A DNA stretch of 64,000 nucleotides from Ostrea edulis (lineage: Eukaryota), in the NCBI RefSeq assembly GCF_947568905.1, contig NC_079169.1, positions 38,130,001 through 38,194,000 of the forward strand, read 5' to 3'. Below, piece by piece: positions 1-64,000 of this stretch. Each line of letters opens with the position of its first letter. Within the stretch, counting starts at the first letter, position 1. Below the pieces are notes generated by a model. The model ran no database searches and had not been told where the DNA came from. It worked only from the letters and a program-made list of their open reading frames with translations. Made by a program: the position numbers and the translations under genes.

Positions 1-3000
1 ACAGAGCTTTGGAGACCAGCTATTAGACCTGAGGTCTGACCGCCTGTCTGGTCGTTGATGTACATGTAATAACCATTCTGGTTTTTATATGTGTCGTCTG
101 TGTTTGGGGCCATGTTTCTGTTGGAAGATGTGGATAATCCATTAGCTCTTGTCCAATCAAACCGATCCAAAGGAAGTTCTTGCCAACCACAGGTGTCCTG
201 TTCAAATTTGCATGTTTGTGGACACTGGCTTTCATCCGAGTTGTCTTGGCAGTCTGACTGGAAGTTGCACACCTTGGATATTGGTATACACGTTCCATCA
301 CCACAGGCAAATTTACTATCGCCACATGCATTTGGATTTGGTGTAGTGGAAACTGCTGGGGTGATGGGTACAGAGCTTCCACACCCAGGGGTGAAGCTGA
401 CATCATCAATGGCAATATCCCCAAGATATCCCACTCCCACCACTCCTTCTATAACAACTTGGTAAGGTGTAGTGCTCTGCAGGCTTACTTCCAGTCTGTG
501 CCAGGTCTGATTCTGATTGGCTGAAATTGTCTTTAAGAGAACTGTTCCTCTGTTTAGAGTTTTGACGTAGATGTTGAGCTGACCAACATTCTTGCCATAC
601 ATGTGGTACCAAAGTCTCATTGCACAAGGAGATGTTGGGACATTCAAATTGTAAACCAACTGTGCTGTATCATTTGGTCTCTGAGGTCTAGAAGACTCAA
701 TGTACATGTAATATCCTGACCTTGTTCCAGAGGTATGATCTGCAGTTGGCCCTGTGTTGAGAGAATTGGTTGGTCCCTGATGTCTTTTCCAGTCAAACCT
801 ATCTGTGGTGGATTGCTGCCACCCACACAGTCCATACTCAAAGTTGCATTGCTGATATCCCGAACAGATGCTTCGACTCTCATCTGATCCATCGCAGCAG
901 TCTACCTGGAGGTCACATTTGAGATTTTGTGGCACACAGTTTCCTGAACGGCAGGTAAATTGTCCCATCAAACAGGAGGTGGTTGGAGGCAAATAATGAC
1001 ATTGAGTGAAAGCTAAGTCATCAATGGCAACATAGTTGGTTTGTCTTCCATATGTTGCTACTTCAATAGTAAGCTTGAAATTCATTGGACATTTTGGGAG
1101 TTGAACAGTTGCTTTTCTCCAGACCATTTGGGTGGATCTGAGCTGATATGCATTTCTTATCCATAAATTATTGTAACTCTCTCCCTCTGTGAAATACACC
1201 CCTAAATGTTGGATGCCCGTTCCATTTGTATTGTACCACATTGTGAAAGTGCAAGCAGTTCCTGCCTGATAGTACATGGGGCTTACCAGTCGGGCAATCT
1301 TGCGACTGCGATCTAAAGCTTTGGACTGGATAAGGGCAAACTTTCCTGCTGTAGAACTTGTGCTGTGGTCTGTTGTTGGACTGGGTGATGGGTTGTTGTT
1401 ACTTCCTATGGTCCAGTTCAGAGAGTTGCTCAAGTCATTCTGCCAGTTACAGAATTGTCCATTGTCAAAATTGCATGTACTAGGACAAGAACTTTCATCA
1501 CTCCCATCACTGCAGTCTCTTTTGAAGTCACAGAACATGGTAGCTTTAATGCACTGTCCATTTGTACACTGGCCTTTTCCAGCTCCACAAGGACCAATAG
1601 TGGTTAGAGTCTGGGGAAGATAGGACACAGGAGCCAGTTTACAGCCACTGGTGAAGGATACATCATCAATGGCAATGTCTCCATGATAACCTTTACCACG
1701 AACACCTTCAATCACCACTCTAAAAGGGAGCATGCTGGTTAGGTCAATCATTGCATGAATCCACATGTCAGGCTGAGAACCATTTCTCTGATAGATTAAT
1801 ATTCTTGGTCCCATTTCATATTTTTCGAAATACACATTTAATTCATTCACGTCTTGTCCATGCATGTGATAGAAGAATCTTAACTGACACAAGCCAGCCT
1901 GGGAATTAGCCTGAAACACTGGCGATATCAAACGTGCCGTATCACCTGGTAAACGTGGTGAAGATGTCTCAATGTAGACATAATGTCCAGATGAGGTCCC
2001 ATACGTATGATCAAAGTTTGGTCCCGTTCCTGGAGTGGCAGTGGTTCCTTGTTTCCATGTCCAGTCAAATCTGTCACTGATGTCTTGTACCCAGTTGCAA
2101 ATGTCAGTTTCAAAGTTGCATCTTTCCACATAGTTACTGCATCCAATCTCATCTGAATTATCACCACAGTCATTGGAGAAGTCACATCTTCTTGACATGT
2201 CCACACAAGATCCTCTCAAGCATTTAAACTGATTGGGAGCACATTGACCAATTTGTCCTAGTGCACATGTATTAAAGATCACATCGTCAATGGCTATGCC
2301 TCCTCTATTTCTGTCAAAGTTTCTTGCAACGAAAGCTAACCTGTATCCTGGACTTCGACTGCCAATTCCTACAGTGGCATTTTGCCATTGACTGCCCACA
2401 TTTCTTGATGATGTCCACAACCTGTAGAAGTTGGAGCTACTGGCAGTTGTTGGGTCAGAATTTGGAGGATACAAGAAGAGACTTAACTTGCTGAATGGTC
2501 CTACGTTGGTGTAGTAAGCAAAAGACACGGTACACGAGGCACTCAGATTGCCATACACTGGTGAAACCAATCTAGTGTCCGAGGCATAGGAACCAGAGGA
2601 ACCATCAATAAACATGTAGTTTCCTACTTGAGAGGTTCCATAAGTGTGATCATTTTGAGGCGTATTGAAGGAAGTTGGGGTTGAGGAATTATGCCTCTTC
2701 CAGATGTATCGTCCACCTTGTACAGGAGCCCATCCACAACTTGATTGTTCAAAGTTACACTGCCCACAAGCTGCCTCATCTGACCTGTCATTGCACTGAG
2801 GTATAAAGTCGCAGACTTGATAGGGAGTCACACAGGTCATATCACCACATTGGTGACCTCCTTTGCATGGTCCTAGAGTAGTGGGAACAGTGGTGGCAGG
2901 CGTTCCTAAGGGTAAGACTCCTGGATATGGGTGACAGTCTGAAGAGAAAGAAACATCATCAATGGCAATATCAGACAGATAGGAAGCTCCTGCTGTTGCT

Positions 3001-6000
3001 TCTATCACTACCTGGAATGGAGAGGAGGATCTTATGTTGACCACTTGTCTGGCATAGTAGGAGCCAATATTTCCATGCACGGAGAGAACATTAAATAATG
3101 GCCCATTTATCTGATTTCTGTAGTAGACAGTAAGTGTGTCTACATCTCTACCATACAAGTAGTAGAAGAATCGGAATTGGCAGTAGGGTTGAGCACTAGA
3201 TGCTTGGAAGGTGCGACTGGCAATCCTTGCTTTCTGTCCTGGTTTGACCGGTCTTGAGGTCTCTAAGTAGAGATAATGTCCAGTATTAGAGTTCAGAGTA
3301 TGATCTTTGGTCGGTCCGGTCAAGGCTGATGGTGTTGGACCACTGCGGAGAGTCCAGTCTCTATCATCATCTGTAAGCTGAGTCCAGTCACAAAGGCCAT
3401 GTTCAAAGTTACATCTGTTGTAGGCAGAGCAGGTGTTGTTGGCCTCATCTGTATTGTCCCCACAGTCATCAGAATAATCACACACCCGATTCTGGGAGAC
3501 ACAGGCTCCACTTGTACATTTAAATGTCACAAATGAGTTGCATGAAGAAGAGGTTGGGAATGCACAGCCTTGGAAGCTGATGTCATCTACTGCAATGTCA
3601 CCCACACCACTGTAAGTTCGCTGTCCAGTAATGATCACCTGGAATTGGGAGTGCATTCTTCCAATAGGAACAATGGCCTGCTTCCACACATTGCCCTGGT
3701 CTCCAGACAGATAGAAAATTTGAGTTCTAGTGAAACCAGTTAACTCTTTCAGATACACTCGGAGGATTTGGCTGCCTTTCATATGATACCAGAAAGTCAG
3801 CTGACAGGTGGTTGATGATTGGCCAATCACTGGACTTGTTAAATCTGCTAGTCTTGTATATACTCCTGCCTTGGGGGCCACATACTTGTAATACCCATTA
3901 GGTCCCAGTGTTGTATGGTCAGTCCTAGGTTGGTTGGTATTCTGAGTGGAGGATGATCCTTTGGATGTAATCCACTGGAATCCTGATGAGGTGCTGTTCC
4001 ATTTACAGGATGGATGACTCGGCTCAAAATCACAGTTAAAGCCACAATTCGATTCATCCTCACCATTTGGACAATCACTGTTGAAGTCACAGACACTGTT
4101 GATACTTGTCAAACACTGTCCATTGCCACATCTGAAGGGACAAGTTGGGTTAATTGTTGGATTGATACAGTGTCCAGCTGTGATGGAAATATCATCAATA
4201 GCAATGTCTCCTAGAACACCACCCACTACACCCTCTATCAGTATCTGGTAATCTCTACCATTAGTTGATGTAAACTCTACATTGCCTTGTTTCCATCCCC
4301 GACCTTGGTTTCCTGTGAGAGTAAACACTGAGTTTGGAGTGGATGTAAAAAAATACTGATAGATGTTGAGGGTTCCCATTTGTACTCCATACATATTGTA
4401 CCAGAAAGTCATACAGCGAACTGGGGTCTTTGAACTCTCAAATGTTTGGGAGGCAAGCCATGCCTTATCACCACGTTTTCTTGGAGCAGAAGCTTCGATA
4501 TAGATGTAGGTACCATAAATAGTCTTCAGTGTATGATCTGTGGACGGTCCAGTGCCTGTACTTGCAGTAGTTCCCCTAGCTCTCTCCCAGTCAAAAGTAT
4601 CATTTTGCTGGACATTGGTCCAAGTACACACATCACTCTCAAAGTCACAGCTTCCAGGAGGTGGGCAGGCACCACTGGCCAGCTTGATATCATCGATTGC
4701 AATATCCCCAGCATATCCATTGCCAATAACTCCTTCAAAAGTCAGCCTGAATGCCGCTGGGCTGTTAATAGACTTCTGTGCAATCCTCCATTTGTTGCCC
4801 TGATTTCCTGACATCGTCCAAATAGGATTTTGAAGCTGACTGGAGGTTCCTTGTTTCAGATACATATTCAGTGCACCAATGTTTCTTCCGTACATATTGT
4901 ACCAAAATGTTAGACAAGATCCAGTACCTGAGGTGGCAGGGAAGGATGGACTGTCAATTCTTGCTTTGTCATTCCTTCTCCTTGGAGCAGACGATTCAAT
5001 GTACACATAATGCCCACTTGCCGTTCCATAGGTATGATCGCTTACTGGTCCAGTGCCTCTGCTAGCTGTACTTGATGAATGTAGTGCCCAGTCAAATTGA
5101 TCAGACACATCTTGGGTATATCCACACATTCCATACTCAAAGTCACAAGTCAAGGACCCTGGACATAAACCCTGGTTTAGTGAAATGTCATCCAGAGCAA
5201 TATCTCCTTGGTAACTGACACCTGCTACACCCTCAAACACAAACTTCACTTGTCCTTGACTTTGGAGATGGACCTGGGCATATTTCCAGAATAATCCTTG
5301 GTTTCCATGCTTGTTCCACAGGAGCTGTCTCCTTGTGGAGGACACATTTTGGACATATAGGTTGAGATTGTTGATGTGAGCTCCATGCATGTTGTACCAG
5401 AATTTCAGGCACACACCAGCAGACTTGACATACACAGAGGGACTAATTATTCTAGCTGTTGTATTTGGGAGCTTTCCTGACACTTCAATGTAGATGTAAT
5501 GGCCTAGATTATTTTTCAATGTGTGGTCAGATACTGGTCCAGTGCCACCTGAACTGGTTGATCCATTTTTCATTGTCCAATTGAAATCATCTCCTACATC
5601 TTGGTTCCAAGAGCAGAGACCTGACTCAAAGTCACAGTCCACCGCTGTTCTGGGGAAGACTGCAGGGGTTGTTCCCATAGAGATAGCAGATGTTGGTGTT
5701 GTGGCAGAGCAAGGGTTTGCAGAAATAAGGATATCATCAATGGCAATGTCACCTGTATAGTTTCCACCATAAACTCCTTCAAATATTATACTGTATTCAT
5801 GATTAGACACAAAGTTTACTGCGGCCTGATGCCATGTATTTCCTTGGTTGCCGCTAAGACTGAAGGCCATGGTTTTCTGTTTGTTGAAGAAGTCCTGTTT
5901 GTAGATATTCAGTGATCCAATGCCAGCTCCATACATGTGATACCAGAAATAGAGACAGCTGCCCACAGTTCTTGTAAGAATGTCACTGACCAGCCAGGCT

Positions 6001-9000
6001 TTTTCTCCAACTTTCCTATTATTTCCAGAAGATTCAATGTACATGTAGTAGCCTGCTTTGGTTCCTAGGGTATGGTCTTCACTCGGTCCGGTTGTGGTAG
6101 ATGGTGTTCCTCCATAATCTCTAAGCCAGTCAAAATCATCTCCGGTCAATGCATTAGTCCATCCACAAGTGTCCTGTTCAAAAGTACAGGAGCCATCTGG
6201 TGGGCACCGGCCATCTGTGACCAGAAGATCATCAATGGCAATGTCACCCCTGTATCCTATCCCTCGAACTCCTTTGATGAGAATCTGGTACTGCTTGCCT
6301 GGGCTAGTCTTCAGTGATACTGTAGCTCTCCTCCATATATTCTCCTGGTCTCCATTTCTTGTCCAAACTTGATCTGGGATCTGAGAACCATTGTTACCTT
6401 GATACACATTCAAAGAACCAATGCTGGTTCCATACATGTGATACCAGAACCGTAAACATCTGGCAGCTCCACCATCGTAGAACCTACTGACCAAAATGGC
6501 CTGATCATTGGGTTGTCTTGGAGCTGAACTCTCAATATAGGCAAAGTGACCAGTGTTGGATCCAAATGTATGGTCAAATGGAGGACCTGTTCCTACAGAT
6601 GCTGTGCCATTCTGGCCAATTGTCCAGTCAAAATCATCCATTTGCGAGTTTGTCCAATCACAGAAGGTACCATCTTCAAAGTCACATCCAGGCTGTGGTG
6701 GGCACACACCATTGGTTATATTGAAATCATCAATAGCAATGTCACCTCGGTATCCATTACCAACAACGCCATTGACTGAAAGTCGGAAGTCAGTATTGGA
6801 TATGACCTGTCTCTGTGCCATTTTCCAAGCATCACCCTGGGTTCCATTTCTAGACCAAAACAGAGTTCTGTTGTTGTTTGTCACAAGGTAAATATTGAGA
6901 CTGCCAATGTTGTTTCCAAACATATAGTACCAAAATGTCAGACAATGGCCTTGGGGAGGTGTGGGGGGCAGATTGGCACTATCAAGGATAGCTACATCTC
7001 CTTTATGCCTCGGTGCTGAAGTCTCGATAAATGCATAGAATCCTTGTCCTGTTCCTGTAGTGTGGTCAAATTTTGGACCTGTTCCTACACTCTTGGTGGA
7101 TCCATTCAGTCTGGACCAGTCAAAGTCATCATCTACAGCCTGGTTCCAATTGCAGAAATTTTGAGAGAAATCACAAGCAAGGTTTGGAGGTGGAGCAAGT
7201 GGATAACAGTTGGCAAAGGTGATGTCATCAATAGCTATATCAGAAGTGGTGGAGGCAGAGAAGCCCCTCGATGGAAGGACTTCAAAGACGATACTGAACT
7301 GGCCAGTAGTCTTTCCAAGGGACTTGCCTATGTATGCAGTTCCCTTCTGCCATGCAGATCCATGGTTTCCACTTAATAGCAATAGAGTTTTCTTGGTACT
7401 GTTGACTAAGGCATTAACAATTAAGCTTCCTGTGTTTTGTCCATTAATGTTGTAGTAGAAGTACATTTCACAAGTGTCTGATGCAGGTGGCAGAGGTGGA
7501 CTCTGAAGTACAGCTCGACTCAAGAATACTCTGTAAGTTCCTTCCACATAAGCATAATATCCACCAGAAGTGTTGGTGCTATGGTCAGTTTGAGGTCCAA
7601 CAGCATTTCCAGTGTTCTGTGATCCAGAGTGTCTGGTCCAATTGTAACGTCCAGTGCTGAGGTCATTCCATCCACACAATCCATTTTCAAAGTTACAGGG
7701 TCCACATGTTGCTTCATCTGATCCATCTGTGCAGTCAGCAATCCAATTGCAGACTTTCTGGGTTGGTATGCAGGTAGTCTGGTCAGCACACTGAAAATTT
7801 CCACTTCCACATGGGCTGACAGTTGAAACAGTCGGAGGAATAGTTATAGAGGTGGCAAAGGTCTGGTTTGTTTTCTTGCAGCCTTTACTGAAGACTGTGT
7901 CATCAACAGCAATGTCACTGTAGTAACCGCTTCCTACCACTCCCTCCATCAAGACCTGGAATGGATATGGACTGATGAGATTGACAGTGGTCTTCACCCA
8001 CACATCTCCCCTATTTCCAGACACGGTGTACACTTTACTTAGATGTTTGTTGATGTCAAGTGTGTATACATTCAGAGTCCCCATGGTTCGACCATTCATA
8101 TTGTAATAGAATGTAATCATACACTGGTCTTGGGTTTGTGCTGTGCTGTACATGCTACTGAGGAGAACAGCATTATCTCCAAGTCTTCTGGGCCTGGAGG
8201 ACTCTATGTAGATGTACCCGCCAGATCGGAGCCCAGTGGTGTGGTCCCTAGAAGGTCCTGTGGATACTGATGGAGTGGGAGCATTTCGTCTGGTCCAGTC
8301 AAACTTATCTCCCCTGTCCTGCACCCAGTCACACAGAGAGGTAGAGAAGTCACAGCGAGATGGGAACTGGTCACAGTGAGCATTTGGTCCAATTTCATCT
8401 GTGTTATCTCCACAGTCATCAGTGTAGTCACAGACTCGAGACATGTCTACACAGGATCCACGCTGGCAAGTGAACTGAGTGGAGGGACATGAGCTCTGTA
8501 TTGGAGGAAGTCCACAATTCACAAAAGAAACATCATCAATTGCAATGTCTCCAATCACTGTGTAGCTACGATAGGCACGGAACTCAATGCTGAAAGGAGC
8601 AGTCCTACGACCAATGTTGACAGTGTACAAATTCCATTGGTTGCCTTGATTTCTGTAAAAGCTTGACAGGCGTGTCGATGTTCCTCCTGTGACAATATAG
8701 ACATATAATCGACCAATGTGGTTACCATACATATGATAGTAAAATGACATCTGACAGGTATCGGCTGCCTGTTGGAGAGTGGGGCCTCTCAGAGTGGCAA
8801 GCGAGTTGGCTTTTCCATTGCTGGCATCAACATACATGTAATAATGGGTAGCATCTCCATAAGTGTGGTCACTGGAGGGACCGGTATTGGCAGTCTCTGT
8901 TCCATTGTTGTGTCTTTCCCAGCGGAAGGATCCAGCACTGTTGTCAAACCAGCCACAAAGTCCTGTGCTTCCGTCAAACGTACAATTTCCACAGTTCTTC

Positions 9001-9454
9001 TCATCGACTCCGTTACTGCAGTCTTTGTTGAAATCACACTGCTGGCTCTGGGTGTAAGTAGTTCCATCCCCACAACTGAAGAATTTTGGTCCAAATGACC
9101 CAGAACAGGTTCCAGTGGTTAGACTGATATCATCAATTGCAATGTCCCCTGCGAATCCTTGACCCTCTACTCCTGTGAAGGTTAAAATGTACTCGAATCG
9201 GCTGGTGATGTTAACACTGGCTTGGAGCCACTTCTGTCCCGTGTTGCCTGTATTGGACCACAGAGAGATGGCATTTCCATACTGAGTGGAGCGTACGGAC
9301 TCCATTCTAATGCTGAGAGAGCCCACTTGGGTTCCATACATCAGGTACCAGAAAGAGAGACAGCTGGCAGAGGTGGCATTCAGAGTGGTGGACTGTAAAA
9401 TGGCTTTGTCTCCTGGCTTACGTGGAGCTGAAGCTTCAATATAGGCATAGTATC
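1..9454 (-). CDS. Exon 54: giant uninterrupted exon (15 complete + 2 partial MAM, 10 LDLa), runs off window start
   Basis: Acceptor tttacag|GA TAC TAT at 9454. The same frame (codon starts at positions 2 mod 3) holds at 9452, 5150, 2651 and 83. The ORF track has no terminated ORF in this frame, consistent with no stop codon. Confidence 0.93.
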
Positions 9455-12400
9455 CTGTAAAGAAAGTTATTCATTGGGTAATTAGAACATTTCCAATGCT
9501 TTTGCCTTCAATATCTACACCAATTGTACTAACAGGTATTCCCTCATGAATGCAATGAAGACATGAACAGTGTGTATGAATCTTAATAAACATAGTACAT
9601 CTATTTCAATGGCTGAAGATTCCAACAGAAATGAAAGTAGAATGTAAAGATAAGATACGAATTTCATTTGAAAATACATGAGGGTATGAACTGCAGCAAA
9701 ACTTCACACAGGCTTACTTTTCATTAAGTGTTAACTCTCTTCATAAAGTATGCTGGCATGAAGTATCACAGTTCATATCTTCATGCATTTTTTAAACAAG
9801 AGGCCCATAGGCCATATCACTCACCTGAGTCACCTTGGCCAATATCTGCAGATTTTCCCCTACAGATTTGCATGTAAAACATTGATCATCTATCCTACCA
9901 CTGTGATGTTAACAAACTTGAATCTGGACTATATCAGGAAGCTTACATGTAAATTTGAACTTTTCTGGTCCAGTGGTTCTTGAGATGAAGATTTTTAAAG
10001 ATTTTCCCTATACATTTGCATGTATAACTGATCCCCTATTGTGGCCCCATCCTACCACCAGGGGCCATGGTTTTAACAAATTTGAATACTTTTTTGTGAT
10101 TATCTTCCCTTTGAAGGGGACACAGCCCTTCATTTGAACAAATTTGAAAGCCCTTCACCCAAGGATGCTATTTGCCAAACTTGGTTGAAAATGGTCCAGT
10201 GGTTCTGGAGAAGAAGTCAAAAATGTAAAAAGTTTACAGACAGACAGAAAACAGGTAATCAGAAAAGCTCAGGCAAGCTAAAAATAAAATTTATTTTGTA
10301 AAAGTAAATCATTTTAACTGTAAACAGTTAAGAACTGAGATCGTATTCCTACTTCTTTTTTTGACAAGATTTTAAATATATGCATGCCTCTGCTCAATAC
10401 AAATTAAGATATCTATGTGTGATTTGAGTGTGAAGTTTTACCATTAGCATTTCCAACAGTGTGGTCCACTGAGGGGCCAGTTCTAGCACTTCCTGTGGCC
10501 CCCTTGTTTCTCAGCCAATCAAAATCATCACCAGTCATTGTATTGGTCCAGGTACAAAAATCTGTTTCAAAGTTACAGCTACCAGGTGCTGGACAGGCTC
10601 CATCTACAATGCTGACATCATCGATTGCAATGTCACCAAGATACGATCTTCCACGGATTCCCTCAAATGTAATCTGTGTGCACAAATAATGAAATGTCAG
10701 GGTAAGAAAATCTAATTTACATACAGTAAAACATGGTTACAGCAAAGTAATTTTCATATCCGGTAGATTTAAAATACAGTAAAACATACTTATAAGGAAC
10801 ATGTTTATAATGACTTCATGCTTATTGTGAAATGATATTTATTCTCTATGAGAGGAAAATGATAAAGTTTGGTTATAATAAATCATGTCTATAATGAATC
10901 AAAACTCTTCATGCTATAAATGTGTTTTACTGTATATCTATAATAACTATTAAACAAAAGTATTAATTTGAAAAAATTACTAAAAATAAACAACAATGCA
11001 CTACTAGATCCAAATTCTCTATAGGACTGTATTTTTCTCCATGACAATGAAGACAGTTCTGTTCACTGACCTGATACAGTGTATCACTATAAATAATAAA
11101 GACAGTTCTGTTCGCTGTCCTGATACAATGCATCACTATAAATAATAAAGACAGTTCTGTTCACTGACCTGATACAGTGTATCACTATAAATAATAAAGA
11201 CAGTTCTGTTCACTGACCTGATACAATGCATCACTATAAATAATAAAGACAGTTCTGTTCACTGACCTGATACAATGCATCACTATAAATAATAAAGACA
11301 GTTCTGTTCGCTGTCCTGATACAATGCATCACTATAAATAATAAAGACAGTTCTGTTCGCTGTCCTGATACAATGCATCACTATAAATAATGAAGACAGT
11401 TCTGTTCGCTGACCTGATACAATGCATCACTATAAATAATAAAGACAGTTCTGTTCGCTGACCTGATACAATGCATCACTATAAATAATAAAGACAGTTC
11501 TGTTCGCTGTCCTGATACGGTGTATCACTGTAAACAATAAAGACAGTTCTGTTCGCTGACCTGATACAATGCATCACTATAAATAATAAAGACAGTTCTG
11601 TTCGCTGACCTGATACAATGCATCACTATAAATAATAAAGGCAGTTCTGTTCGCTGTCCTGATACGGTGTATCACTGTAAACAATAAAGACAGTTCTGTT
11701 CGCTGACCTGATACAGTGTATCACTATAAATAATAAAGACAGTTCTGTTCGCTGACCTGATATGGTGTATCACTGTTGAGCGTGATCTGTCCAATACGCC
11801 ACATGTTGTACTGGTTCCCTGACCTTGTCCAGATTGCAGGTCTGAGAGTACCCTGGGAGAAGAGACGAATATTGAGAGTTCCGACTGTGCCATACATATG
11901 GTAGAAGAATGTCATGCAGCGACCGGTGGTGGGCGGGAATGTGGGTGACAAGAGGCGGGCCTTCTGACCAGGACGTCTCGGGGCCGATGTCTCAATGTAC
12001 ATGTAATAGCCTGTCAATAGGTAGACAAACTCGAATAAATTCCTAAACATTATGCTATAATATTACAAACGATTTTTTAAATTGTAATGTAAGGTTCCTT
12101 AATTTAAATCCAACCTATCAATCGATGATTATTATAAACCTGTTTAATAAAGCACCAAATGTGTGGTGAAGACATATTACCATCTTTTGTTCCGTAGGTG
12201 TGATCCACACTGGGCCCTGTGCCACGCGTTGTCGTGCCACCATTGTCTTTGACCCAATCAAAGTCATCGGTTTTGTCCTGTGTATATCCACAAACATTCT
12301 GGTCTTCAAAGTCACAAGTGTCTGTAAGAAAATAATACCTCTCACATTCATGAATAAATTGAATATTACAAGGACATAGTTGTAGTAATAACTTTAACAG

Positions 12401-15400
12401 CAGTTTACTTAAATTATGAAATCTACATACCAGACGGTGGGCAAGATCCTGTATTGACAAAAATGTCATCTACTGCAATATCTCCTTTGTAGCCTTTTCC
12501 TATTACACCTTCCAGCACAACCTGAGTACAAATAAAGGCTATAAATACAATTCATATTAAATGTAGAAAAGTTATTCTTTCTCATGTTAATTCACCTCTG
12601 GAACAGATCTCTGATAGGGATAATAAATTACATAAAATGCAGAGAACTGAGAGGGTAGGTCTGCCTGTGTTTATGGCATATAACACACTGAACCTCCAGT
12701 AGGTGTGGTCCTTGGTCCTTACCTGTGTGTCTGTTTGTCTGCATATGCTCTTTACCTGTGTGTCTGTTTGTCTGCGTATGTTCTTTACCTGTGTATTTGT
12801 TTGTGTCTGTATGTTCTTTACCTGTGTATTTGTTTGTCTGTGTATGTTCTTTACCTGTGTATTTGTTTGTCTGTATGTTCTTTACCTGTGTGTTTGTTTT
12901 TTTGTATATGTTCTTTACCTGTGTGTCTGTTTGTCTGTGTATGCTCTTTACCTGTGTGTCTGTTTGTCTGTGTATGTTCTTTACCTGTGTATTTGTTTGT
13001 GTGTGTATGCTCTTTACCTGTGTATTTGTTTGTGTGTGTATGTTCTTTACCTGTGTGTTTGTTTGTCTGTGTATGTTCTTTACCTGTGTGTTTGTTTGTC
13101 TGTGTATGTTCTTTACCTGTGTATTTGTTTGTGTGTGTATGTTCTTTACCTGTGTGTTTGTTTGTCTGTGTATGTTCTTTACCTGTGTGTCTGTTTGTCT
13201 GTGTATGTTCTTTACCTGTGTGTCTGTTTGTGTGTGTATGCTCTTTACCTGTGTATTTGTTTGTGTGTGTATGTTCTTTACCTGTGTGTTTGTTTGTGTG
13301 TGTATGTTCTTTACCTGTGTATTTGTTTGTGTGTGTATGTTCTTTACCTGTGTATTTGTTTGTGTGTATATGTTCTTTACCTGTGTGTTTGTTTGTGTGT
13401 GTATGTTCTTTACCTGTGTGTTTGTTTGTCTGTGTATGTTCTTTACCTGTGTATTTGTTTGTGTGTGTATGTTCTTTACCTGTGTATTTGTTTGACTGTG
13501 TGTGTATGTTCTTTACCTGTGTATTTGTTTGACTGTGTGTGTATGTTCTTTACCTGTGTATTTGTTTGTGTGTGTATGTTCTTTACCTGTGTATTTGTTT
13601 GACTGTGTGTGTATGCTCTTTACCTGTGTATTTGTTTGACTGTGTGTGTATGTTCTTTACCTGTGTGTTTGTTTGTCTGTGTATGTTCTTTACCTGTGTA
13701 TTTGTTTGTCTGTGTATGTTGTTTACCTGTGTATTTGTTTGTCTGTGTATGTTCTTTACCTGTGTATTTGTTTGACTGTGTGTGTATGCTCTTTACCTGT
13801 GTATTTGTTTGTGTGTGTATGCTCTTTACCTGTGTATTTGTTTGTCTGTGTATGTTCTTTACCTGTGTATTTGTTTGTCTGTGTATGTTCTTTACCTGTG
13901 TGTTTGTTTGTCTGTGTATGTTCTTTACCTGTGTATTTGTTTGTCTGTGTATGTTCTTTACCTGTGTGTTTGTTTGTCTGTGTATGTTCTTTACCTGTGT
14001 ATTTGCTTGTCTGTGTATGTTCTTTACCTGTGTGTTTGTTTGTGTGTGTATGCTCTTTACCTGTGTATTTGTTTGTGTGTGTATGTTCTTTACCTGTGTG
14101 TTTGTCTGTCTGTGTATGCTCTTTACCTGTGTATGTTCTTTGCCTATGTATTTGTTTGTGTGTGTATGTTCTTTACCTGTGTGTTTGTCTGTCTGTGTAT
14201 GCTCTTTACCTGTGTATGTTCTTTACCTGTGTATTTGTTTGTGTGTGTATGTTCTTTACCTGTGTGTTTGTTTGTGTGTGTATGTTCTTTACCTGTGTGT
14301 TTGTTTGTCTGTGTATGCTGTTTACCTGTGTGTTTGTTTGTCTGTGTATGTTCTTTACCTATGTGTTTGTTTGTCTGTGTATGCTTTTTACCTGTGTATT
14401 TGTTTGTATGTTCTTTACCTGTGTGTCTGTTTGTCTGTGTATGCTCCTTATCTGTGTGTTTGTGTATGGTCCTTGCCTGTGTATTTGTTTGCATGTTTTT
14501 TACCTGTATGTTTGTTTGTGTGTTTCTTGGAGGAGTAAGTGATGTCAGATTGATGAAGACAGATGCAAACTTCCATTGCAGTCCCTGATTTCCAACCTTA
14601 GTCCAAATAGCTGTTCCCATATTACCATCTAAACATCAGAACACATCTTTTTTAGAACAAATCTTTCAAACCACTCTTTAAACAATGCAATATGATTAAA
14701 TTGATCATATTTTAAGTATCTACCACTTCAAAGCATTTTCAAATGCAGAAATTTAGTATTCAACGATTTGAGAAATGAAAACACAGCTTACATGCATTAG
14801 CGTACACGTTGAGTCGGTTGATGTCTGATCCATACATGTTGTACCAGAATTTGATACACTTTCCTGTACTGTCTAATGGCATCTGAGGGCTGACGTATTG
14901 AGCTGTGTCATTTGGATGCCTTCCACTGGCCTCAGTATATATGTATTTACCTAATAAAAACAGACTCTCCTATAGATGAGCATATTGAAAAATTACCTCT
15001 TCCTACCAATGTACACACAGTAAAACACACTTATGACAAAAACACATATAATGAATTTATGCTTATCAATGTGAAGATATAGTTATTCCCTTATGGGAGG
15101 AAATTAACAAATATTGTATTGGATATAATGAAATCTATTTATTACAAACTATTTTTCACTGTCCCTGGAGATTTGCTATAGAGTTTTACTTTATCAATCG
15201 TATTGCTAGAAGCATTATGTACTGTAGTGTAAATTTATGACAAAATAAAATATCTTATAAACATCGGACAAGTTACTAGAAAATGTAAGACTTTTTACCT
15301 TAAATGATTGACTTGAACATTTTTATTCATTTACCCAGCATGTGATGGAAACAGTGATGCAACATACTGGGACTGAATCTGGGTCATCAGGAACATGATC

Positions 15401-18400
15401 ACTAAACGATCCGTCACTCAGTCAGGAACATGATCACTAAACGATCCGTCACTCAGTCAGGAACACGATCACTAAACGATCCGTCACTCAGTCAGGAACA
15501 CGATCACTAAACGATCTGTCAGTCAGTCAGGAACATGATCACTAAACGATCCGTCACTCAGTCAGGAACACGATCACTAAACGATCCGTCAGTCAGTCAG
15601 GAACATGATCACTAAACGATCCGTCACTCAGTCAGGAACATGATCACTAAATGATCCATCACTCAGTCAGGAACATGATCACTAAACGATCCGTCACTCA
15701 GTCAGGAACATGATCACTAAACGATCCGCCACTCAGTCAGGAACACGATCACTAAACGATACAAACCAGCTATGCTGGTCAGTAAACATTCCTCTAAATA
15801 AAACACTGTCATGTTCTCACACCTCAAGATTCAACTGACCCAAGTTGAACACTTCCCTCCCCCCTTCCCCAAATATCTTGGATCAAGGGTCAGACGAATC
15901 TGTTTTGTGAGAGGAGAGAGAATGTGACACAACATGCCAGCAACAGGGGCTGAACACAGTCCAACAACAGGAATGTTACCAAAAGACCAAAATGTCTGAA
16001 CTCGCTAGGCTGGTAAGTAAACAACCCTCCATACCCAACACCTCATCACAATTCATATATTACACTTACAATGCTGTTTCTTGACATAGTTTTTACCAGA
16101 CGCATGATTCTTACCTCGGCTACTTTGAAGGGTGTGGTCAAACTTGGGTCCTGTAAAACCTGATGAAGTTCCTCCAGAATGAGTGCTCCAATTAAACTGA
16201 TCATTAGAATTTTGGGTCCACTGGCAGGGGGTGGGACCATCAAACGTACAGTCATACTTGGTGGGGGCTGTTGATTGGAGAAACATGCATACATAATTTT
16301 ATAATCATCAGAAATGTCAGATAGCGGTACAATGTCCATTCAGTATCAGACCAGCATGTCCAATTACGAGCTGTGTCTAAAATGTATTTCAATGCCATGA
16401 TAAATACAGTAAATATTTTTATAAGATACATGATTTATCCGGTAAATCTTTTTACAAGATACATGCCCGGCTACACGATTTATATGGTAAATCTTTTTAT
16501 AAGATACATGCCCGTCTACACGATTTATACGGTAAATCTTTTTATAAGATACATGCCCGTCTACACGATTTATCCAGTGAATCTTTTTACATGAAATATC
16601 CATGCCTCTATGATTAATTTCATTTATCACTTGCAGGTCTTGTACCCATAGTGTTGTTAACGTTTATTTCTGAGAGATGTTAAAACAATTATCTAATGGA
16701 TATTTTTCTTGGTGAGTGATCATTGTTTAGCAGTTTATTTGGAACTCAGAGCAAAAGTATTGTCTATTTTGAGACAACAATCCTAAATAACACAAATAAA
16801 GCATAAAATTATTTCATAAACTTGATAACATCCCTTGTCAATATGAAATTCAATACGGTACTTCCTGTGGATTTTACGAGGATACACGAGGTATAGTAGA
16901 TCACTTTTATTTTGCGGGACCTTATTTTCAGGTAGATACAATGATGTATTTATTCATGAGAGATAACTTAATTTCTTGAATCATTATTCATTGCTGAATT
17001 CATCTATATCTAAGAGTTTATTCCCGAGAACTAAATTTTTGCGAATGGCAAGTCTTGCAAAATTACGCGTAAATAATATTCTCTTGAATAAAGAATTATT
17101 TAAAGTATTGCATTAAAGTAATTTAGAATGCATATTAGGAACATTGTCAAATCTTTATGACCAGTCTTGCTCTAATTTACCAAAGGAATTCGGAAAATCA
17201 TAAACTCACGGTACGACACAGTGGATACTGCCATTGGTGTAGTCATGGCTGTGGTTTGTGAGGCACAAGTTCCACTTTGGATCATAACATCATCAATGGC
17301 AATGTCTCCAGAAAAGCCATTTCCTACTTCTCCATCAAATGTGATCTAACAAAATTAATAGTCAATAACAATTAGACAGCCATTAAAAAAATCAATTCAA
17401 ACAAGCAAGTTTTGATGTACCCTTCTTATTTCCCTCTAGGGAACTCTCATACTTGTGCAGTGTGAAAAGAATTCTGTAGGATATATATACAAATACCTAT
17501 CAATAACAAGTGCTAATGCCTATCATGTTATTTCATTGCTTATATCATCTATAAGAAAAGATTATATAATTGCAATAATGCATCATTTTTATATTTTCTG
17601 TGTAGTAAAACATTTTTTTCATTTTTCTTTTATATTTTCACAGTGTTACATCGAACAGAATATGCAGATATATGCCTTCAATATTTTGATCATTTTTCTC
17701 TCTGTCCCCCAATAAGGATCTAAAGTACCACTAAATGCACCTCCAACACATAAGAGCGCAAGTCTCAAAATTGGTGCATTAGCTTATTATGGATATAATT
17801 TGTGAATTTTCTGAGCAGTGGGCATCACAACTCAACTGAAGGTGAAACAAAGTACAAGCAGTCCTACCTGGAAGCCCACAGAGCTTGCGACATCCACGTT
17901 AGCCTGCAGCCAGATATTCTGGTGGTTACCTGTGGCATTCCAAACCATCACACTCCTCCTTGAAATGTCAGGTTTGTACAGGCGCAGGGCTCCCACATCT
18001 GTAACACCCAGGAAAAAGCACAAGTGTAGTTCATAGATATTTCATAATCAGAATTAAAAGAATATAAAAGTTTATCGTTGCAACAATAAAAAAAATAAGA
18101 AAACCTACCTCCTGTTTCATATGCATAGTACAGTGAAACCTGTCTAATAGACATGCACAGGGAGACCAGTTTTTTTGTTGGAATACAGTGTGTCTGAATA
18201 AACAGTGTATGAAAGAATGAAAATATGAAATAGAAAATGAAAATTATAGGGGTCAGAATGCCCCGTGATATGTATTGCACAGGTGTCAGATTAGACAGTT
18301 TTCACTGAACATCATAATAACTTCCGTGATTTGAGAATCTTAAAAGTAACTCGAGATTGAAAAACAAATATCTCCCCAGCTCCCCAAATAGGAAGTGCTC

Positions 18401-21400
18401 CAAATGAAACCTCCTCCCCTTAATGTACTGCATGGTATGGAGGAGAAAGCATGAGCAGGAACATAGACATTATGAACTCCCATAAGCCACATCGGAGAAG
18501 TGTTCACAAACTATTTTACACCCTCTACCCCTCAGATCCACTATAACTTTAAGTATAACTATTGGATCCTCCTGTCCATACAATATGTACATCTGCAAAT
18601 GCCAATGAAGCATTGCACAAAATTTCAAGACTATCAGAAAAGCCATATAGGAGGAAAAGCATCCACAATCTATCTTAACAGCCTCCACCCCTCTTAGATT
18701 CACTAAAACTTTAAGGAAAATAATTAGATCCACCTGTCCCGAAAATATGCACATCTACAAATGGCAATGAAGTATTGCACAAAGTTTCAAATCCATCCAA
18801 TAAGACATATAAGAGGAGAAGTGTTCACAAGTTATTTTACATCCTCCACCCCTCTCAGATCCACTGTAACTTTTAGGAAAATAATTGGATCCTCCTGTCC
18901 CGAAAATATGCACATCTGCAAATGGCAATGAAGCATTGCACAAAGTTTCAAATCTATCTGATAAGCCATATAGGAGAAGTGTTCACAAGCTATTTTATGT
19001 CCTCCTCCCCTCTTAGATCCACTATAACTTTTAGGAAAATCATTGGATCCTCATGTCCCACCAATATGCACAAATACAAATGGCAATGGCAATCTATCTG
19101 ATAAGCCATATAGGAGGAGAGGCGTTCACAAAATTTTGCAACAGACATATGGACAAAAAGTACAAAAACAATGTCTCCCCCTGAAAGAGGGGGGACATAA
19201 TTATCACGAACCCCAGTGGTGGATACACATCATATGAAGCTAATCACTGTTCAGTTTTTATATTACTCTGGTTACCCGATGATTACATACTTGGTCCATT
19301 CATGTTGTACCAGAAGCTGACACACGAAGCCGAGGTTCGAGGAAAATACGGACTGTATAACCAAGCTCTCTGGCCCCGATTTCTGCCGGTAGACTCAATG
19401 TACATGTAAAATCCTGAAATTCAGTACAAATGAAATAAAACATGACCATAATTCCCCAATTAATAGGGACCCTCCCCCCCCCCCCCATTCCTGAAACAAT
19501 TATTTGTAATATCTGTTCAATTGAAAATATCTTACTTGAACATATATTACAATTCTGTTTACAGTAAAACATGGTTATAGCAAACCTCCAGGGACAACGA
19601 AAGAGTTTGCTATAACCAAATTTCATTGTCCAATAACATTTCTGTTATTTCCTATCACTATGTAAAAACGTAAATTCAGTATAAGCTTGTCTTACTGTAT
19701 ATATTCAATAAGTCAAATTATTAACTTTAAAATACCTCAAAGTTCAACCAATAAAGATAATAACTTTAAAATACCTCTGTCTGAGCCAGTGGTATGGTCT
19801 ACCGTTGGTCCCGTGTTGGGTGTCAATGTGGCACCAGCACTCCTCTGCCAATCAAAGTTGTCTCCCTTCCGTGTGTTACTGTACCCACACGTATCAATCT
19901 CAAAATCACAGGAGCCTGGCTGGGGACACTGGCCTGGCAGGATCTTGATATCATCGAGAGCCGTGTCACCCATGTACCCATTACTAACCACCCCTTCAAA
20001 CACAAGCTACAAAGAGGATATGTACACATAATATATGATGAACACTTATTAAAAATAATTCTTCTCAATTCTATTACATCACGTACACAGTAGATGTAGC
20101 TTATACTTCTGTGTAGTGTAAATTTCTGCCATGTTAGCAGTCTCGAGATATCTACAGATTGAATTATAAACCCGTGAATATGAAGTTCATTGGGTTTTTG
20201 GGGGGGGGGGGGGGGGGGGGGGGGCTTGGCTTAATTCCAAATTGTAACTAATATCAACAAAGTCGAGGAAATGAAGAGGAGAGAGGAGTCTGATATTTTA
20301 TTATTATACTACAGGATTTTTAAAGTACATCTATTAAATATAATACAAAATGACTCTAAAAGCACTGTACAGGATTTTAAAACATGTACATGTAAATGAC
20401 ATATTAAATTTAAAAATATATAAAACATATCAAATAAAACAGTTACAATTCAAATTATCAATAAGTTAAGAATTGTAAGCATATAAAAATTTAAAGATTT
20501 GCATGAAAAACAAACACAACTGTACAAAATATACAATTTATAACAGAATATCAAGTAGACAGCGATAAATATTGTTGGCAAATCAAAGTGATTTCTCACC
20601 ATTGAAAAACTGATGAACAAGACCTCAGTACTGTTAAGTTTTTAAGGGGCATGAAGCCTCAAAGCCGACCTTTTAAAGGTATCAAAAATCATGTTAACAC
20701 ATTGGTAAGTAGCACAAAAATTATCAGTAGGATAATTGTAAAATTTAGTGTAGAAAAAGACCTTATAATTCTAAAATATTTCATAATGGGACAATATATT
20801 TAGGAAATACATTCAGGTCTCCAGAGTGCCACATTACTTGTCCTTTGACCTCTGTAGAGACTTGACTAAATTAATTAGCCTCATAATGGAGTATGTATAT
20901 ACCTGTATGATGTGTTGAAAATGTAGACAAAAAGGGAATACTGCAGGCAAAGGGTGACTAAGACCATTATAACTTAATACGTTTCATCAAATCAAACAAA
21001 AGTCGATATGACTAATTGTTTAGCTCACCTGGAACACAACATTAGATTTGACAGACTGTTTAGCTCACCTGGAACACAACATTAGATTTGACAGACTGTT
21101 TAGCTCACCTGGAACACGCCCTTAGACTTGACAGTCACCGCCTGGTACAACCAGCGATAAACTTGTTGGTCCCCTGTCCTATTGAACAACAGTATGTCTG
21201 GATTGCCACTATTGGGACGTAGATAAACATTGAGTTCTCCTGAATTATTCCCCTGCATGTAGTACCAGAATTGTAGGCAGTCTCCATTTGATGTTGGTAA
21301 GTAGACCTTACTGACAATTCTGGCTTTGTCTCCCTTTGATCTTGGGGCTGATGACTCGATGTAGATAAAGTAGCCTAAAGGTAAATAAAGATAAGGATTA

Positions 21401-24400
21401 TATGTCACAGCATCAACAGAAATAGCCTTGGCCACAAAGAAATGTGTTTCTGGGAGACAGACTGATTTTTCCAAACCTGAATTCTTACAAAAATTCCTTA
21501 TACGTTAAGTATATATAGAAAAGCACAATTATAGCGAACCTCCAGGACCAGCGAAAAACAGACACTTTTGACCAAACTTTGTTATATCCAATGAAATTTT
21601 TGTTATTTTCCTCTCATAGGGGAATAAATATCACTTTGCAATAAGCGTGAAATCATTATAAGTGTGTTAGTTATAAGTGTGTTTTATTGTTACAGTAATA
21701 TACATGAAAGTGTTCTTTGTAAATATAAACATTTCACACCAAATATGTCCTAGCATCTCCGAAACAACAGTACAATCATTTCCTTTAAGATATCTAAACA
21801 TTATTCTGCAAATTGATTGAATGGAGAGTAACAATGGTACCAAGCATTAAAAAATTATTCAAATTTAATGCTATTTCCAATACACATCAGATACTATATT
21901 ATCAGAGCAGGGATGTCAAATTTTACACTTTTTTAAATACTCATCAGATAATGTATTATCAGAGCAGGGATGTCAAATTTTACACTTTTTTTAATACTCA
22001 TCAGATAATGTATTATTAGAGCAGGGATGTCAAATTTTACACTTTTTTTAATACTCATCAGATAATGTATTATCAGAGAAGGGATGTCACAAAATTAATA
22101 CACAGAGACTGTGAATTTAATTTTGCAGGAAAAAATTAACCACAAAATGGACAAATTAAAATCACTCTTGAGGATTCTCATTGAGGCACTTTTCTATCTG
22201 ACAGTAGAAATCACAAGCTTATGTATTGTATATAACATGTGACACTTTTCTATTTGACAGTAGAAATCACAAGCTTATGTATCATATATAACCTGTCACA
22301 CTCCCCCCCCCCCAAAAAAAAACTTACAATTTAAGAAAAATTTGAAAAACACTGTAATTCTTAACAATTATCAGCAAAACAAGTACATAACTCTGTGATA
22401 AAACTTGCTTAGGACTGTTCCAGAAATGATCAAATGGGGGGGTTGGGCGGCAAACGATATTTTTTTGTGTGGGTGGTCGTATTTTTTCAGATTTTATTTG
22501 GTCCGTGGTTGGACTGTTAATAAAATATTTATTATGGGCAGTGGGTAGTTTCTATTGTTTTTTAATTTTGTGCCACGCAGATGTTGAGTTTTCAGAATAT
22601 TTTTATTGTCGCTCTTGTCGTGTTGGTTACAAAACGATGGAGGGAAAATTGAAAATGTGCTTTCGAAATGCTGCTTTCGAAATCGGAAATCGGAAGTAAC
22701 ATAGAACTATTCGAGTTGTCGCTCTTTGCAGCGCATAACTTTCCATTACGGCACTCTTCAAATTAGAGGCGCGTTTAGTAGGGTCCGTTGGGACGTGATG
22801 GCGGCGAACTCTGTTCTGTAGATTATTACAGTTTACAGTGCATCGATTTTGGGAATATTTTGAAACCAATAGGTATTCCGTTTTCTAATAAAAATAGGCA
22901 AACCTTGGTTGATTTATGCGAGGGTAACTATGCGTTATATTTATCAGTCTGTGATGGTGATATAGAGGCCTCCGGGCGCGGGCTCCATTAGAAGACGAAC
23001 GATTCGTGGAAAAACATATCCATACCCATTTCATGATAATAGCATCGCTTGGACTCCCAATCTTTCCAACATTCCCGTCACAGATGTCTTTGATTGTTGA
23101 TGTGACATCATTTCTTCGGAACTACTGTGATACAATGTCGCACAGGTATTACCGCGTCATTGACTAATATGTTGACGGTGCTACCGTTTGAGCGAGGGCA
23201 GCTTCATATATGTGCATATTTTGTAATGTTCATGCTTTGATCAGGTTCAATTTAAACAATATCTATTTGCAAAATACTCATTACATGAATTTTCTCCCAG
23301 GGTTTTATATTAAAAATCATTAAAACATGTATACATGAATGTGATTTAAATATTTTTATGCTATATAGTATATATACATTTTATTTCTGCTGCCTTCACT
23401 GTGACTTGCTTAAACTTTGATGCACGACCTGTTCTGAACTGTATGTTCTCAGCCTCTACTTCTTTTTTTCTACTCTCAATCTTTTCAAAGTTACTAATTG
23501 TATGATAAAAATGCCTAAACCTTTCAAGTTTGTAAAACTATGTTTAAACAGCACTGTCTTTGAACACAAAGCGCATTTCAATATGTCATGAAAATTTAAA
23601 AATAAATCGATAAATTCAACTATTTGGCATGTATATGCCCCCCCCCCCCCCCCCCCCCCCCCTGCGAACCTATCTAATTAGAAAAATAAAATTCATATGA
23701 TAATCCCCTTGTAGCAATGGTATGTTCTAAAAGAGAAAATTAGAACAAGTTTTATAATATTGTACATAATCCTAGTTGTAACACAATGAAGAAATATTTC
23801 AGCATTCACATATAATCATTGAATAAAATTGCAACATCATTGATTTCAGTCCCTCTCCTGGAATGCAGTTGTTGTGAGGAAACATTAATTAAGATCAATT
23901 TACAAAACTAGAATTAAGGATTTTTCAGTCGTTAATTTATTTAGCAAGTGGCATGGGGTTGGTTATCATGAGGGAGGGAGGGAGGGGGGGTTGTCATCGT
24001 GGTTTGCATTACCAGACATGTTAAAAGGAAATGGATTGAAGCATTTGTTATTTTTAGTCACGGGAAAAAAACCAAAGATTTTAAAAAAATATTTTCAATC
24101 CAATCGATTTTTTGTAATTTTTTAAATACCACTAATTCAGTACCTGTGGTCCCTCACGTATTCTAACAATTTTTAAGAAGTTAGTCTCCCTTTTTTTTTG
24201 TTGGTTAGAATAATAAATTGCTATTGAGAATTTAGTATTTTAATGTTCACGTAATAATAATGTCCCGGTAGTATGACTTTTAACAAGTACGTATTTAGAT
24301 CCGCCACTGTCTGCCTTATCATGACGTACGTCAAACGTAGACGTGACGTCACACATCATCTTAGCCTGCCTTTCATAAACATTGCACTCCGTTAAACATT

Positions 24401-51277: not shown

Positions 51278-51344
<67 letters not shown>

Positions 51345-63762: not shown

Positions 63763-64000
63763 CTGAAATAGAATGAGCTGAACGAATACAAGCTGTAATA
63801 TTGATTCAAATAAAAAGCGTTTGTGAAATACTATGCTCCCTCAAACCTGGCCTATTGATCATTGAACTGGATTTTTATCAGTTGCAAACTCATACCTTGA
63901 TATTTAGTTCTTCTTACATGAAGTTTATTGTGATATATTAGTTCAAAAGTCATGATGAAGGTTAAAGTTGCAAACAGACTAAAACTACACCCCACCCCCC

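What the first reader, a model, noticed from the sequence alone, without database searches (positions are those of the whole stretch)
1..9454. Single coding exon of at least 9.45 kb after 53 exons averaging about 190 nt
Seen: one frame from the acceptor at 9454 to the window edge (at least 3,150 codons). It carries no introns, transposons or minisatellites, while upstream introns are full of them. The exon begins mid-MAM at the G|GYY intron position used by most upstream domains. The ORF track misses it because it has no stop in the window. Established: intron loss via reverse-transcribed mRNA is 3'-biased. Inference: this boundary marks where such a conversion tract ended.
Basis: partly seen in the sequence, partly recalled or inferred. 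Interest (0 to 1): 0.7.

Follow-up and report, generated by a model that had tools for sequence, protein, structure and literature searches.

The report
Ancient 10-kb exon in oyster gene
A 10.2-kb uninterrupted coding exon inside a huge oyster cell-surface receptor gene is real and is shared with abalone and many unnamed, probably molluscan, assemblies. Amphioxus has 76 small exons in the same place, so about 75 neighbouring introns were removed as a block in a distant ancestor, not recently in this oyster.

Summary
The minus strand is open from 9470 to beyond the window edge. The exon starts at 9454 (acceptor AG at 9456-9455, phase 1, G|GYY). It ends 764 nt past the edge at a donor, giving 10,219 nt with 16 whole and 2 partial MAM domains plus about 10 LDLa domains. 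No tandem arrays lie inside it, and there is no insertion relative to six orthologs. dN/dS is 0.07 against a related oyster.

The exon is internal: about 20 more exons, 21.7 kb and about 1,100 codons follow it. It is also ancient: abalone and at least 15 other assemblies carry the same single open frame, collinear end to end at 45-56% identity.

In amphioxus the collinear stretch (41% identity) is 76 exons. Both ends of the mollusc exon sit on amphioxus introns of the same position and phase. So about 75 adjacent introns were lost precisely before bivalves and gastropods split. A spliced-cDNA template is the likeliest cause, but that is inferred.

Oysters later acquired a 144-nt intron near the 3' end, and another lineage acquired a 659-nt intron 17 codons away. 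No RNA data were available. This is a large example of a known process.

The parts
1..9454 (-). In-window part of the giant internal coding exon. The whole exon is window -764..9454 (G000:C6:38129236-38139454), 10,219 nt, with 16 whole and 2 partial MAM domains and about 10 LDLa domains.
   Evidence: Open frame. Pfam MAM and LDLa hits. Contiguous full-length (1-158) MAM profile matches. Donor AAG|GTCAGC at -764. 79.4% DNA identity to a related oyster contig that stops within 6 nt of both exon ends, with dN/dS 0.07. Collinear single open frames in abalone L015:2412-13112 and in L014:9965-20563.
9455..10436 (-). Intron upstream of the giant exon (982 nt), with acceptor AG at 9456-9455 and a polypyrimidine run before it.
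   Evidence: Sequence. Protein and DNA similarity to orthologs starts at the acceptor. An orthologous phase-1 intron exists in amphioxus, abalone and L014.
10437..10676 (-). Nearest upstream exon. It encodes the end of one MAM domain (profile 134-158) and the start of the next (1-46), whose remainder opens the giant exon.
   Evidence: Six-frame profile hits in one frame with no stop between them.
10677..64000 (-). Upstream, conventionally split part of the same gene: 48 further domain-bearing exon blocks, with introns rich in minisatellites. The gene continues upstream to about window +145,505.

Best explanation
Window 1-9454 is most of a 10,219-nt internal coding exon of a roughly 168-kb oyster gene on the minus strand. 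The gene encodes a giant single-pass membrane protein of about 70 MAM and about 20 LDLa domains, of the kind annotated 'MAM and LDL-receptor class A domain-containing protein'. The exon is the oyster form of a roughly 10.6-kb exon that was already present in the common ancestor of bivalves and gastropods. It arose when about 75 adjacent ancestral introns were removed precisely from an internal segment of the gene. The introns on both sides stayed in place. The likeliest mechanism, which is inferred and not shown, is gene conversion of the chromosomal copy by one or a few partial cDNAs made from spliced mRNA. The tract ended on both sides at ancestral intron positions. The exon has since been kept under strong purifying selection. 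In the oyster lineage a new 144-nt intron (window -908..-765) was later inserted near its 3' end.
For: The exon is real and coding. The frame is open. Domain matches are contiguous. There is no genome-specific insertion. Against a related oyster dN/dS is 0.07 with dS 1.33, and DNA similarity ends at the exon borders. Genomic contigs from three studies cover it without rearrangement. The exon is ancient. Abalone has a 3,567-codon open frame that aligns in one HSP to residues 1-3404 at 49%. L014 has 3,533 codons at 52%. Fifteen further single ORFs cover abalone positions about 15-3560. On-register identity of 50% against 30-35% off-register shows one-to-one domain orthology. Introns were lost, not gained elsewhere. 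The amphioxus homolog aligns collinearly (residues 162-3574, 41%, 2,588 bits, against 33% and 1,776 bits off-register). That stretch is 76 exons with 75 introns and a median exon of 138 nt. Both borders of the mollusc exon coincide with amphioxus introns in the same phase: G|GA TAC at the 5' end and TGT G|GTAAGT at the 3' end. The within-MAM intron slots near profile positions 44-47 and 133-137 recur in amphioxus, an annelid, a placozoan and the oyster's own flanking domains. The loss is clustered. None of 75 sites is retained inside the exon, while about 85% of position-45 sites are retained upstream. Concerted, precise loss of adjacent introns is the stated prediction of the reverse-transcriptase model (PMC3652778).
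Against: No RNA data could be found, so splicing is inferred from sequence and conservation only. The tract is internal, not 3'-anchored, which does not fit the simplest poly(A)-primed version of the model. Intermediate states in other lineages show that fusion can proceed piecemeal: Trichoplax has exons up to 920 codons, and the unnamed L032 has 1,966 + 1,008 codons. One event cannot therefore be told from several. Orthology with amphioxus rests on collinearity and relative identity, not on synteny. Most single-ORF relatives come from unnamed assemblies, so only oysters, abalone and Gigantopelta are named anchors.
Confidence: 0.75

Rival explanations
1. One reading: a 3'-anchored, poly(A)-primed reverse transcript converted the 3' end of the gene in this lineage, and 9454 marks where that tract stopped.
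For: The exon lies in the 3' third of the coding sequence, at roughly 62-90%. Its 5' edge is an ancestral intron site.
Against: About 20 exons, 21.7 kb and about 1,100 codons follow the exon, and they have ordinary introns. The same exon with the same borders occurs in abalone and at least 15 other assemblies, so it is neither recent nor lineage-specific.
Confidence: 0.07
2. Many independent single-intron losses (genomic deletion or microhomology-mediated repair) accumulated over time and happened to clear a contiguous block.
For: Partial fusions of different extent exist in Trichoplax, in an annelid homolog (599-codon exon) and in L032. Several upstream oyster MAM domains are also single-exon, for example 56557-57039.
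Against: All 75 sites are cleared without one survivor, while flanking domains keep about 85% of the same kind of site. Every domain keeps a full-length profile match, so the losses were exact. All surveyed mollusc-type lineages share identical outer borders.
Confidence: 0.13
3. The giant exon is ancestral, and the introns of amphioxus and of the flanking oyster domains were gained later.
For: Intron gain does occur in this very exon: there are two lineage-specific introns.
Against: It would need 75 gains in amphioxus at the same within-domain slots and phases that are used in paralogous domains of oyster, annelid and placozoan.
Confidence: 0.03
4. The exon grew by tandem duplication of an intron-free MAM-LDLa unit inside one exon.
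For: The content is repetitive.
Against: Domains within the exon are only 30-35% identical to each other but 41-56% identical to their positional counterparts in abalone, other assemblies and amphioxus. The domain order, including a run of seven MAM domains, is shared.
Confidence: 0.02

Closest known systems
MAM and LDL-receptor class A domain-containing proteins (vertebrate MALRD1/Diet1; coral MLRP1/2; NCBI '...protein 1/2-like' models in invertebrates)
   Same: Alternating MAM (PF00629) and LDLa (PF00057) domains. The abalone ortholog ends with three LDLa domains, an EGF-like module, one membrane helix and two NPxY motifs, and the oyster has weak matches to the helix and NPLY tail. NCBI names the closest named relatives this way.
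   Different: It is far larger, at about 70 MAM domains and at least 11,500 domain residues. Orthology to vertebrate MALRD1 was not tested. The giant exon is absent from the amphioxus homolog.
Concerted loss of adjacent introns under the reverse-transcriptase (mRNA-mediated) model of intron loss
   Same: The removal is precise, the lost introns are contiguous, and the borders lie at retained ancestral introns, as that model predicts (PMC3652778).
   Different: The scale is about 75 introns in one block, whereas the rodent survey I read lists clusters of a few adjacent losses. The tract is internal with retained introns on the 3' side, and the event predates the bivalve-gastropod split.
Very large internal coding exons of repetitive extracellular or structural proteins (for example in titin, AHNAK and mucin genes; from my own knowledge, not checked here)
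   Same: A multi-kilobase internal exon encodes tandem domains and is flanked by ordinary small exons.
   Different: Here a split outgroup copy shows how the exon arose, and the domains are old and divergent, not recently amplified.

Membership tests
MAM/LDLa multidomain receptor (MALRD1-like) | Multiple MAM domains (PF00629) | tested here: met
   17 stretches in the in-window exon, E = 0, 1,926 bits. About 70 across the gene by six-frame profile scan.
MAM/LDLa multidomain receptor (MALRD1-like) | Interspersed LDL-receptor class A domains (PF00057) | tested here: met
   8 stretches, E = 8e-68. More lie downstream.
MAM/LDLa multidomain receptor (MALRD1-like) | C-terminal EGF-like module, single membrane helix and short cytoplasmic tail | tested here: inconclusive
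   Clear in the abalone ortholog sequence. In the oyster there are only weak tblastn matches to the helix (about -21,600) and the NPLY tail (about -22,500), with E 0.1-0.5.
MAM/LDLa multidomain receptor (MALRD1-like) | One-to-one orthology with vertebrate MALRD1 | not tested
   No vertebrate locus was examined. Sturgeon models appear only as 38% partial hits.
Product of mRNA-mediated (reverse-transcriptase) intron loss | Exact removal of introns without indels at former junctions | tested here: met
   All 16 internal MAM domains match the profile over positions 1-158 without a break. The alignment to split amphioxus domains is collinear.
Product of mRNA-mediated (reverse-transcriptase) intron loss | Adjacent introns lost together | tested here: met
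   75 consecutive amphioxus intron sites are all empty, and both flanking sites are retained in the same phase.
Product of mRNA-mediated (reverse-transcriptase) intron loss | Loss anchored at or biased to the 3' end of the gene | tested here: not met
   The tract lies at roughly 62-90% of the coding sequence, but about 20 exons with introns follow it.
Product of mRNA-mediated (reverse-transcriptase) intron loss | Germline expression of the gene at the time of loss | not testable with these tools
   No RNA runs were found, and the event is ancient.
Processed retrocopy or pseudogene | Free-standing intronless copy with relaxed constraint | tested here: not met
   The exon is embedded in frame between spliced exons of the same gene. 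dN/dS is 0.07.

The most novel reading that the evidence does not exclude
The roughly 10.6-kb exon is the frozen product of a single cDNA-templated conversion that erased about 75 introns at once from the middle of a gene before bivalves and gastropods diverged. It has since received two independent new spliceosomal introns only 17 codons apart, in the same MAM domain near its 3' end. One is 144 nt and is found in oysters. The other is 659 nt and is found in the unnamed P0025/P0027/P0029 clade. This would make the exon a natural test of whether oversized exons attract or favour intron gain. On a tree with every fork at 98% SH-aLRT or more, each intron is confined to one nested clade. Neither site holds an intron in the amphioxus ortholog.
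Probability: 0.3. Interest if true: 0.65.

Novelty: new member of a known kind. Interest (0 to 1): 0.55.

Why it matters
Concerted loss of neighbouring introns is the main comparative evidence for mRNA-templated intron loss, but the examples I read involve only a few introns. Here about 75 consecutive introns are missing with exact junctions. The tract is bounded on both sides by retained orthologous introns, and the result has been conserved across deeply diverged molluscs. That gives a large, clean case for asking how long such tracts can be, and whether they need a 3' anchor; this one has none.

It also gives a case for asking how a 10-kb internal exon is recognised by the splicing machinery. 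The two apparently independent later intron gains inside it are rare, datable events.

There is a practical point too. NCBI's gene models for abalone cut this open frame into two genes, and those for Saccostrea echinata cut the locus into three. Protein catalogues therefore misrepresent what is probably one protein of more than 12,000 residues.

Tried and rejected
- **RNA evidence.** The look-up of sequencing runs (kind rna) returned no run on record as RNA. The four runs laid on L001 (window -1499..4500) are genomic contig sets that run straight through the 144-nt intron. They confirm the assembly but say nothing about splicing. The joints reported there are 21-22-nt repeat matches, not introns.
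- **Failed look-ups.** P0001 is not on record. P0004 is too long for the tool. The Saccostrea P0005 gene range is too long, so no DNA came back.
- **Origin of the 144-nt intron.** It is single-copy in this genome. It has no similarity to flanking exons or to the surrounding 294 kb beyond 16-nt chance words. It has no terminal inverted repeats. An introner or transposon origin, or a tandem-duplication origin, is therefore unsupported. The 6-nt TTCCAG repeat at the ends of the L034 intron is no more than splice-site consensus would give.
- **Other giant exons.** Among the best MAM-coding places in this genome only this locus has a giant open frame; all others are 292 codons or fewer.
- **Annelid outgroup.** The Owenia locus is mostly split, but at 29-36% identity its orthology is uncertain, so I did not use it for dating.
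- **Literature.** Searches found no description of this exon.
- **Joined models.** The join across the 144-nt intron was made only inside local scripts. It was translated correctly. In one search the second exon was taken one base out of frame, so only the intron marks and the other rows of that alignment are usable. The whole coding sequence was not assembled.

Full report
**1. The observation**

The window is G000:C6:38130001-38194000 of an 895-Mb genome. The closest named relative of the encoded protein is from the oyster Saccostrea echinata, at 84% identity. The tools never name the species, so I call it only an oyster.

On the minus strand one frame is open for 3,156 codons, from 9470 to the window edge. 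No other frame in 1-10500 exceeds 141 codons. The frame is entered at ...TTTCTTTACAG|GA TAC TAT. Pfam finds 17 MAM and 8 LDLa stretches in the in-window part.

- GC is 44% in the exon against 33-38% in most upstream 2-kb bins.
- Tandem Repeats Finder reports nothing in 1-9454, and 50 rows (overlapping rows describe the same arrays) in the upstream introns.
- Upstream in the window there are 49 domain-bearing exon blocks with a mean of 185 nt.
- 41 of about 48 upstream MAM domains are cut at profile position 42-45, where the giant exon starts.

Transposon content was not tested separately.

**2. Where the exon ends**

I fetched the neighbouring DNA. The frame runs to a stop at window -813..-811, but the last MAM domain breaks off earlier. 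The sequence reads ...CTC TTC ACA AG|GTCAGC, followed by 144 nt of 28% GC with in-frame stops, then ...TGTGTTTCAG|A TCT GGT GAG.

Splicing these sites gives LFTR-SGEQGAFW, which matches abalone LVWARAGDQGAAW and L014 LYTVSGEQGPYW without a gap. The parts are:

| Part | Window coordinates | Length |
|---|---|---|
| Giant exon | -764..9454 | 10,219 nt |
| Short intron | -908..-765 | 144 nt |
| Next exon | -1255..-909 | 347 nt |

The 347-nt exon finishes the MAM domain plus one LDLa domain and ends at CAG TGT G|GTAAGT in phase 1.

**3. The gene around it**

A six-frame scan used MAM and LDLa profiles built from the exon's own domains. It finds hits only on the minus strand, from about window +145,505 to -19,657:

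| Region | MAM domains |
|---|---|
| Upstream of the giant exon | about 48 |
| Giant exon | 17 starts |
| Downstream | about 5, plus 7 LDLa |

The downstream exons are collinear with the C-terminal part of the abalone protein. That protein ends in three LDLa domains, an EGF-like module, a membrane helix and two NPxY motifs. Weak oyster matches to the helix and the NPLY tail lie near -21,600 and -22,500.

The gene therefore spans about 168 kb. The giant exon is internal, at roughly 62-90% of the coding sequence. About 20 ordinary exons follow it.

**4. Is it one exon, and is it functional?**

- Every internal MAM domain matches the profile over positions 1-158 without a break.
- An alignment with six orthologs shows no insertion of 4 or more residues specific to this genome, so there is no room for an unnoticed in-frame intron.
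- A contig from a related oyster (L033) is 79.4% identical in DNA from window 9460 to -769 and unalignable beyond. Similarity stops within 6 nt of both splice sites.
- That contig has its own acceptor (TTATAG|GA TAC) and donor (AAG|GTCAGT).
- Over 3,401 aligned codons dN/dS is 0.07, with dS 1.33.
- Genomic contigs of three studies cover the region without rearrangement.

No RNA run was available. Splicing is therefore inferred from sequence and conservation only.

**5. It is ancient**

- In the abalone Haliotis rufescens, L015:2412-13112 is one open frame of 3,567 codons. It aligns in a single tblastn HSP to residues 1-3404 of the exon at 49% identity.
- An unnamed ENA assembly has 3,533 codons at 52%.
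- Fifteen further ORFs of 3,345-3,541 residues, from unnamed Logan and ENA contigs, cover abalone positions about 15-3560.
- Where the upstream residues are visible, similarity begins at the G|GYY site.
- Ten of these ORFs end at the same ...SDExxCG(K/E) boundary.
- On-register identity is about 50% and off-register identity is 30-35%. The domains are old one-to-one orthologs, not a recent array.
- Among the best MAM-coding places in this genome, only this locus has a giant open frame.

**6. Direction of change**

The amphioxus homolog P0015 aligns collinearly with the exon. Residues 162-3574 match at 41% and 2,588 bits, against 33% and 1,776 bits off-register. It also shares the domain order, including a run of seven consecutive MAM domains.

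In its 74-kb locus the longest open frame is 185 codons. The stretch that corresponds to the mollusc exon, residues 162-3690, is 76 exons with 75 introns, a median exon of 138 nt, spread over about 47.5 kb.

The amphioxus intron before residue 162 lies in the same Gly codon and phase (G|GA TAC TAC). The one after residue 3690 reads TGT G|GTAAGT, as in the oyster.

The within-MAM intron slots at profile positions about 44-47 and 133-137 recur in four places: amphioxus, the annelid Owenia, the placozoan Trichoplax and the oyster's own flanks.

The introns are therefore ancestral. About 75 contiguous ones were removed exactly on the lineage leading to bivalves and gastropods.

**7. Mechanism**

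Exact, contiguous loss bounded by retained introns is what recombination with a spliced cDNA predicts (PMC3652778). That is my preferred reading, but it is an inference.

The tract is internal, so the simple poly(A)-primed, 3'-anchored version does not fit. Partial fusions elsewhere show that the process can be stepwise:
- Trichoplax has exons up to 920 codons.
- The unnamed L032 has 1,966 + 1,008 codons.
- An annelid homolog has a 599-codon exon.

One event cannot be told from a few. Niu's argument that exon definition selects against very large exons unless flanking introns are short (PMC2614967) is relevant. It is not tested here.

**8. Later intron gains**

The 144-nt intron is confined to the oyster clade: this genome, P0001 and P0002. 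In P0001 and P0002 this is inferred from their frames closing just after ...THTLFTR, as here. For P0002's contig (L033) the donor itself is seen.

A different intron is seen directly in L034, the contig of P0027. It is 659 nt, in phase 0, at PFQ|IILEAK, 17 codons further on. P0025 and P0029 stop at the same place.

On a maximum-likelihood tree of 18 orthologous exons, with every fork at 98% SH-aLRT or more, both clades are nested among lineages without these introns. In the alignment the amphioxus ortholog has no intron at either site. My oyster row there is out of frame after the junction, but the other rows are sound.

One gain each is far more parsimonious than four to six losses. The oyster intron is single-copy and has no detectable source.

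**9. Verdict**

It is wrong about the 3' anchoring and, by implication, about recency. This is a very large and well-bounded example of a known process.

**10. Procedure notes**

Joins were made only in local scripts. Nothing was taken for human.

Noticed in passing
L008:9092-9235 (window -908..-765; G000:C6:38129092-38129235), minus strand: A 144-nt, AT-rich intron of 3n length with in-frame stops, specific to the oyster clade, interrupts what is one exon in abalone and most other assemblies. Its donor is conserved in a related oyster (L033). It is single-copy in the genome, and no source sequence was found.
   Followed up: partly
L034:11521-12179: A second lineage (P0025/P0027/P0029, unnamed) has a different intron in the same MAM domain of the ancestral giant exon. 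It is 659 nt, in phase 0, and lies 17 codons downstream of the oyster site. On the tree it is an independent gain.
   Followed up: partly
L015:4861-5001 (Haliotis rufescens) and the Saccostrea echinata locus of P0005: NCBI's gene models cut the open frame into separate genes. In abalone a model of 8,781 residues ends, and one of 3,845 residues starts, inside the open frame L015:2412-13112. In Saccostrea the locus is split into models of 8,502, 644 and 2,304 residues. The 2,304-residue model starts inside the giant exon and reaches across unrelated genes over 232 kb.
   Followed up: partly
L032:9872-15769 and 16037-19060: An unnamed ENA assembly (43% identity to abalone) has the homologous region as two large exons of 1,966 and 1,008 codons, with split exons upstream. 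This is either an intermediate or an independently derived state.
   Followed up: partly
window 56557-57039, 57435-57854, 50047-50418, 58611-58949: Some upstream MAM domains are already encoded whole or nearly whole in single exons. Intron presence therefore varies from domain to domain in the split part of the gene too.
   Followed up: no
window 12719-14463, 30488-32356, 41255-42391, 42945-43802: Long intronic minisatellites are present: 33-mer x52, 27-mer x70, 27/53-mer x43 and 42/126-mer arrays. A 200-N gap lies at 40834-41033.
   Followed up: no
L030 (Trichoplax sp. H2), 15951-18710: The placozoan homolog carries multi-domain exons of up to 920 codons. It keeps introns only at the canonical MAM slots, which shows independent partial block loss in a compact genome.
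   Followed up: no
window 108 (L001:1608): A G>T difference appears in contigs of two of the four DNA runs. It is probably an ordinary polymorphism within the giant exon.
   Followed up: no
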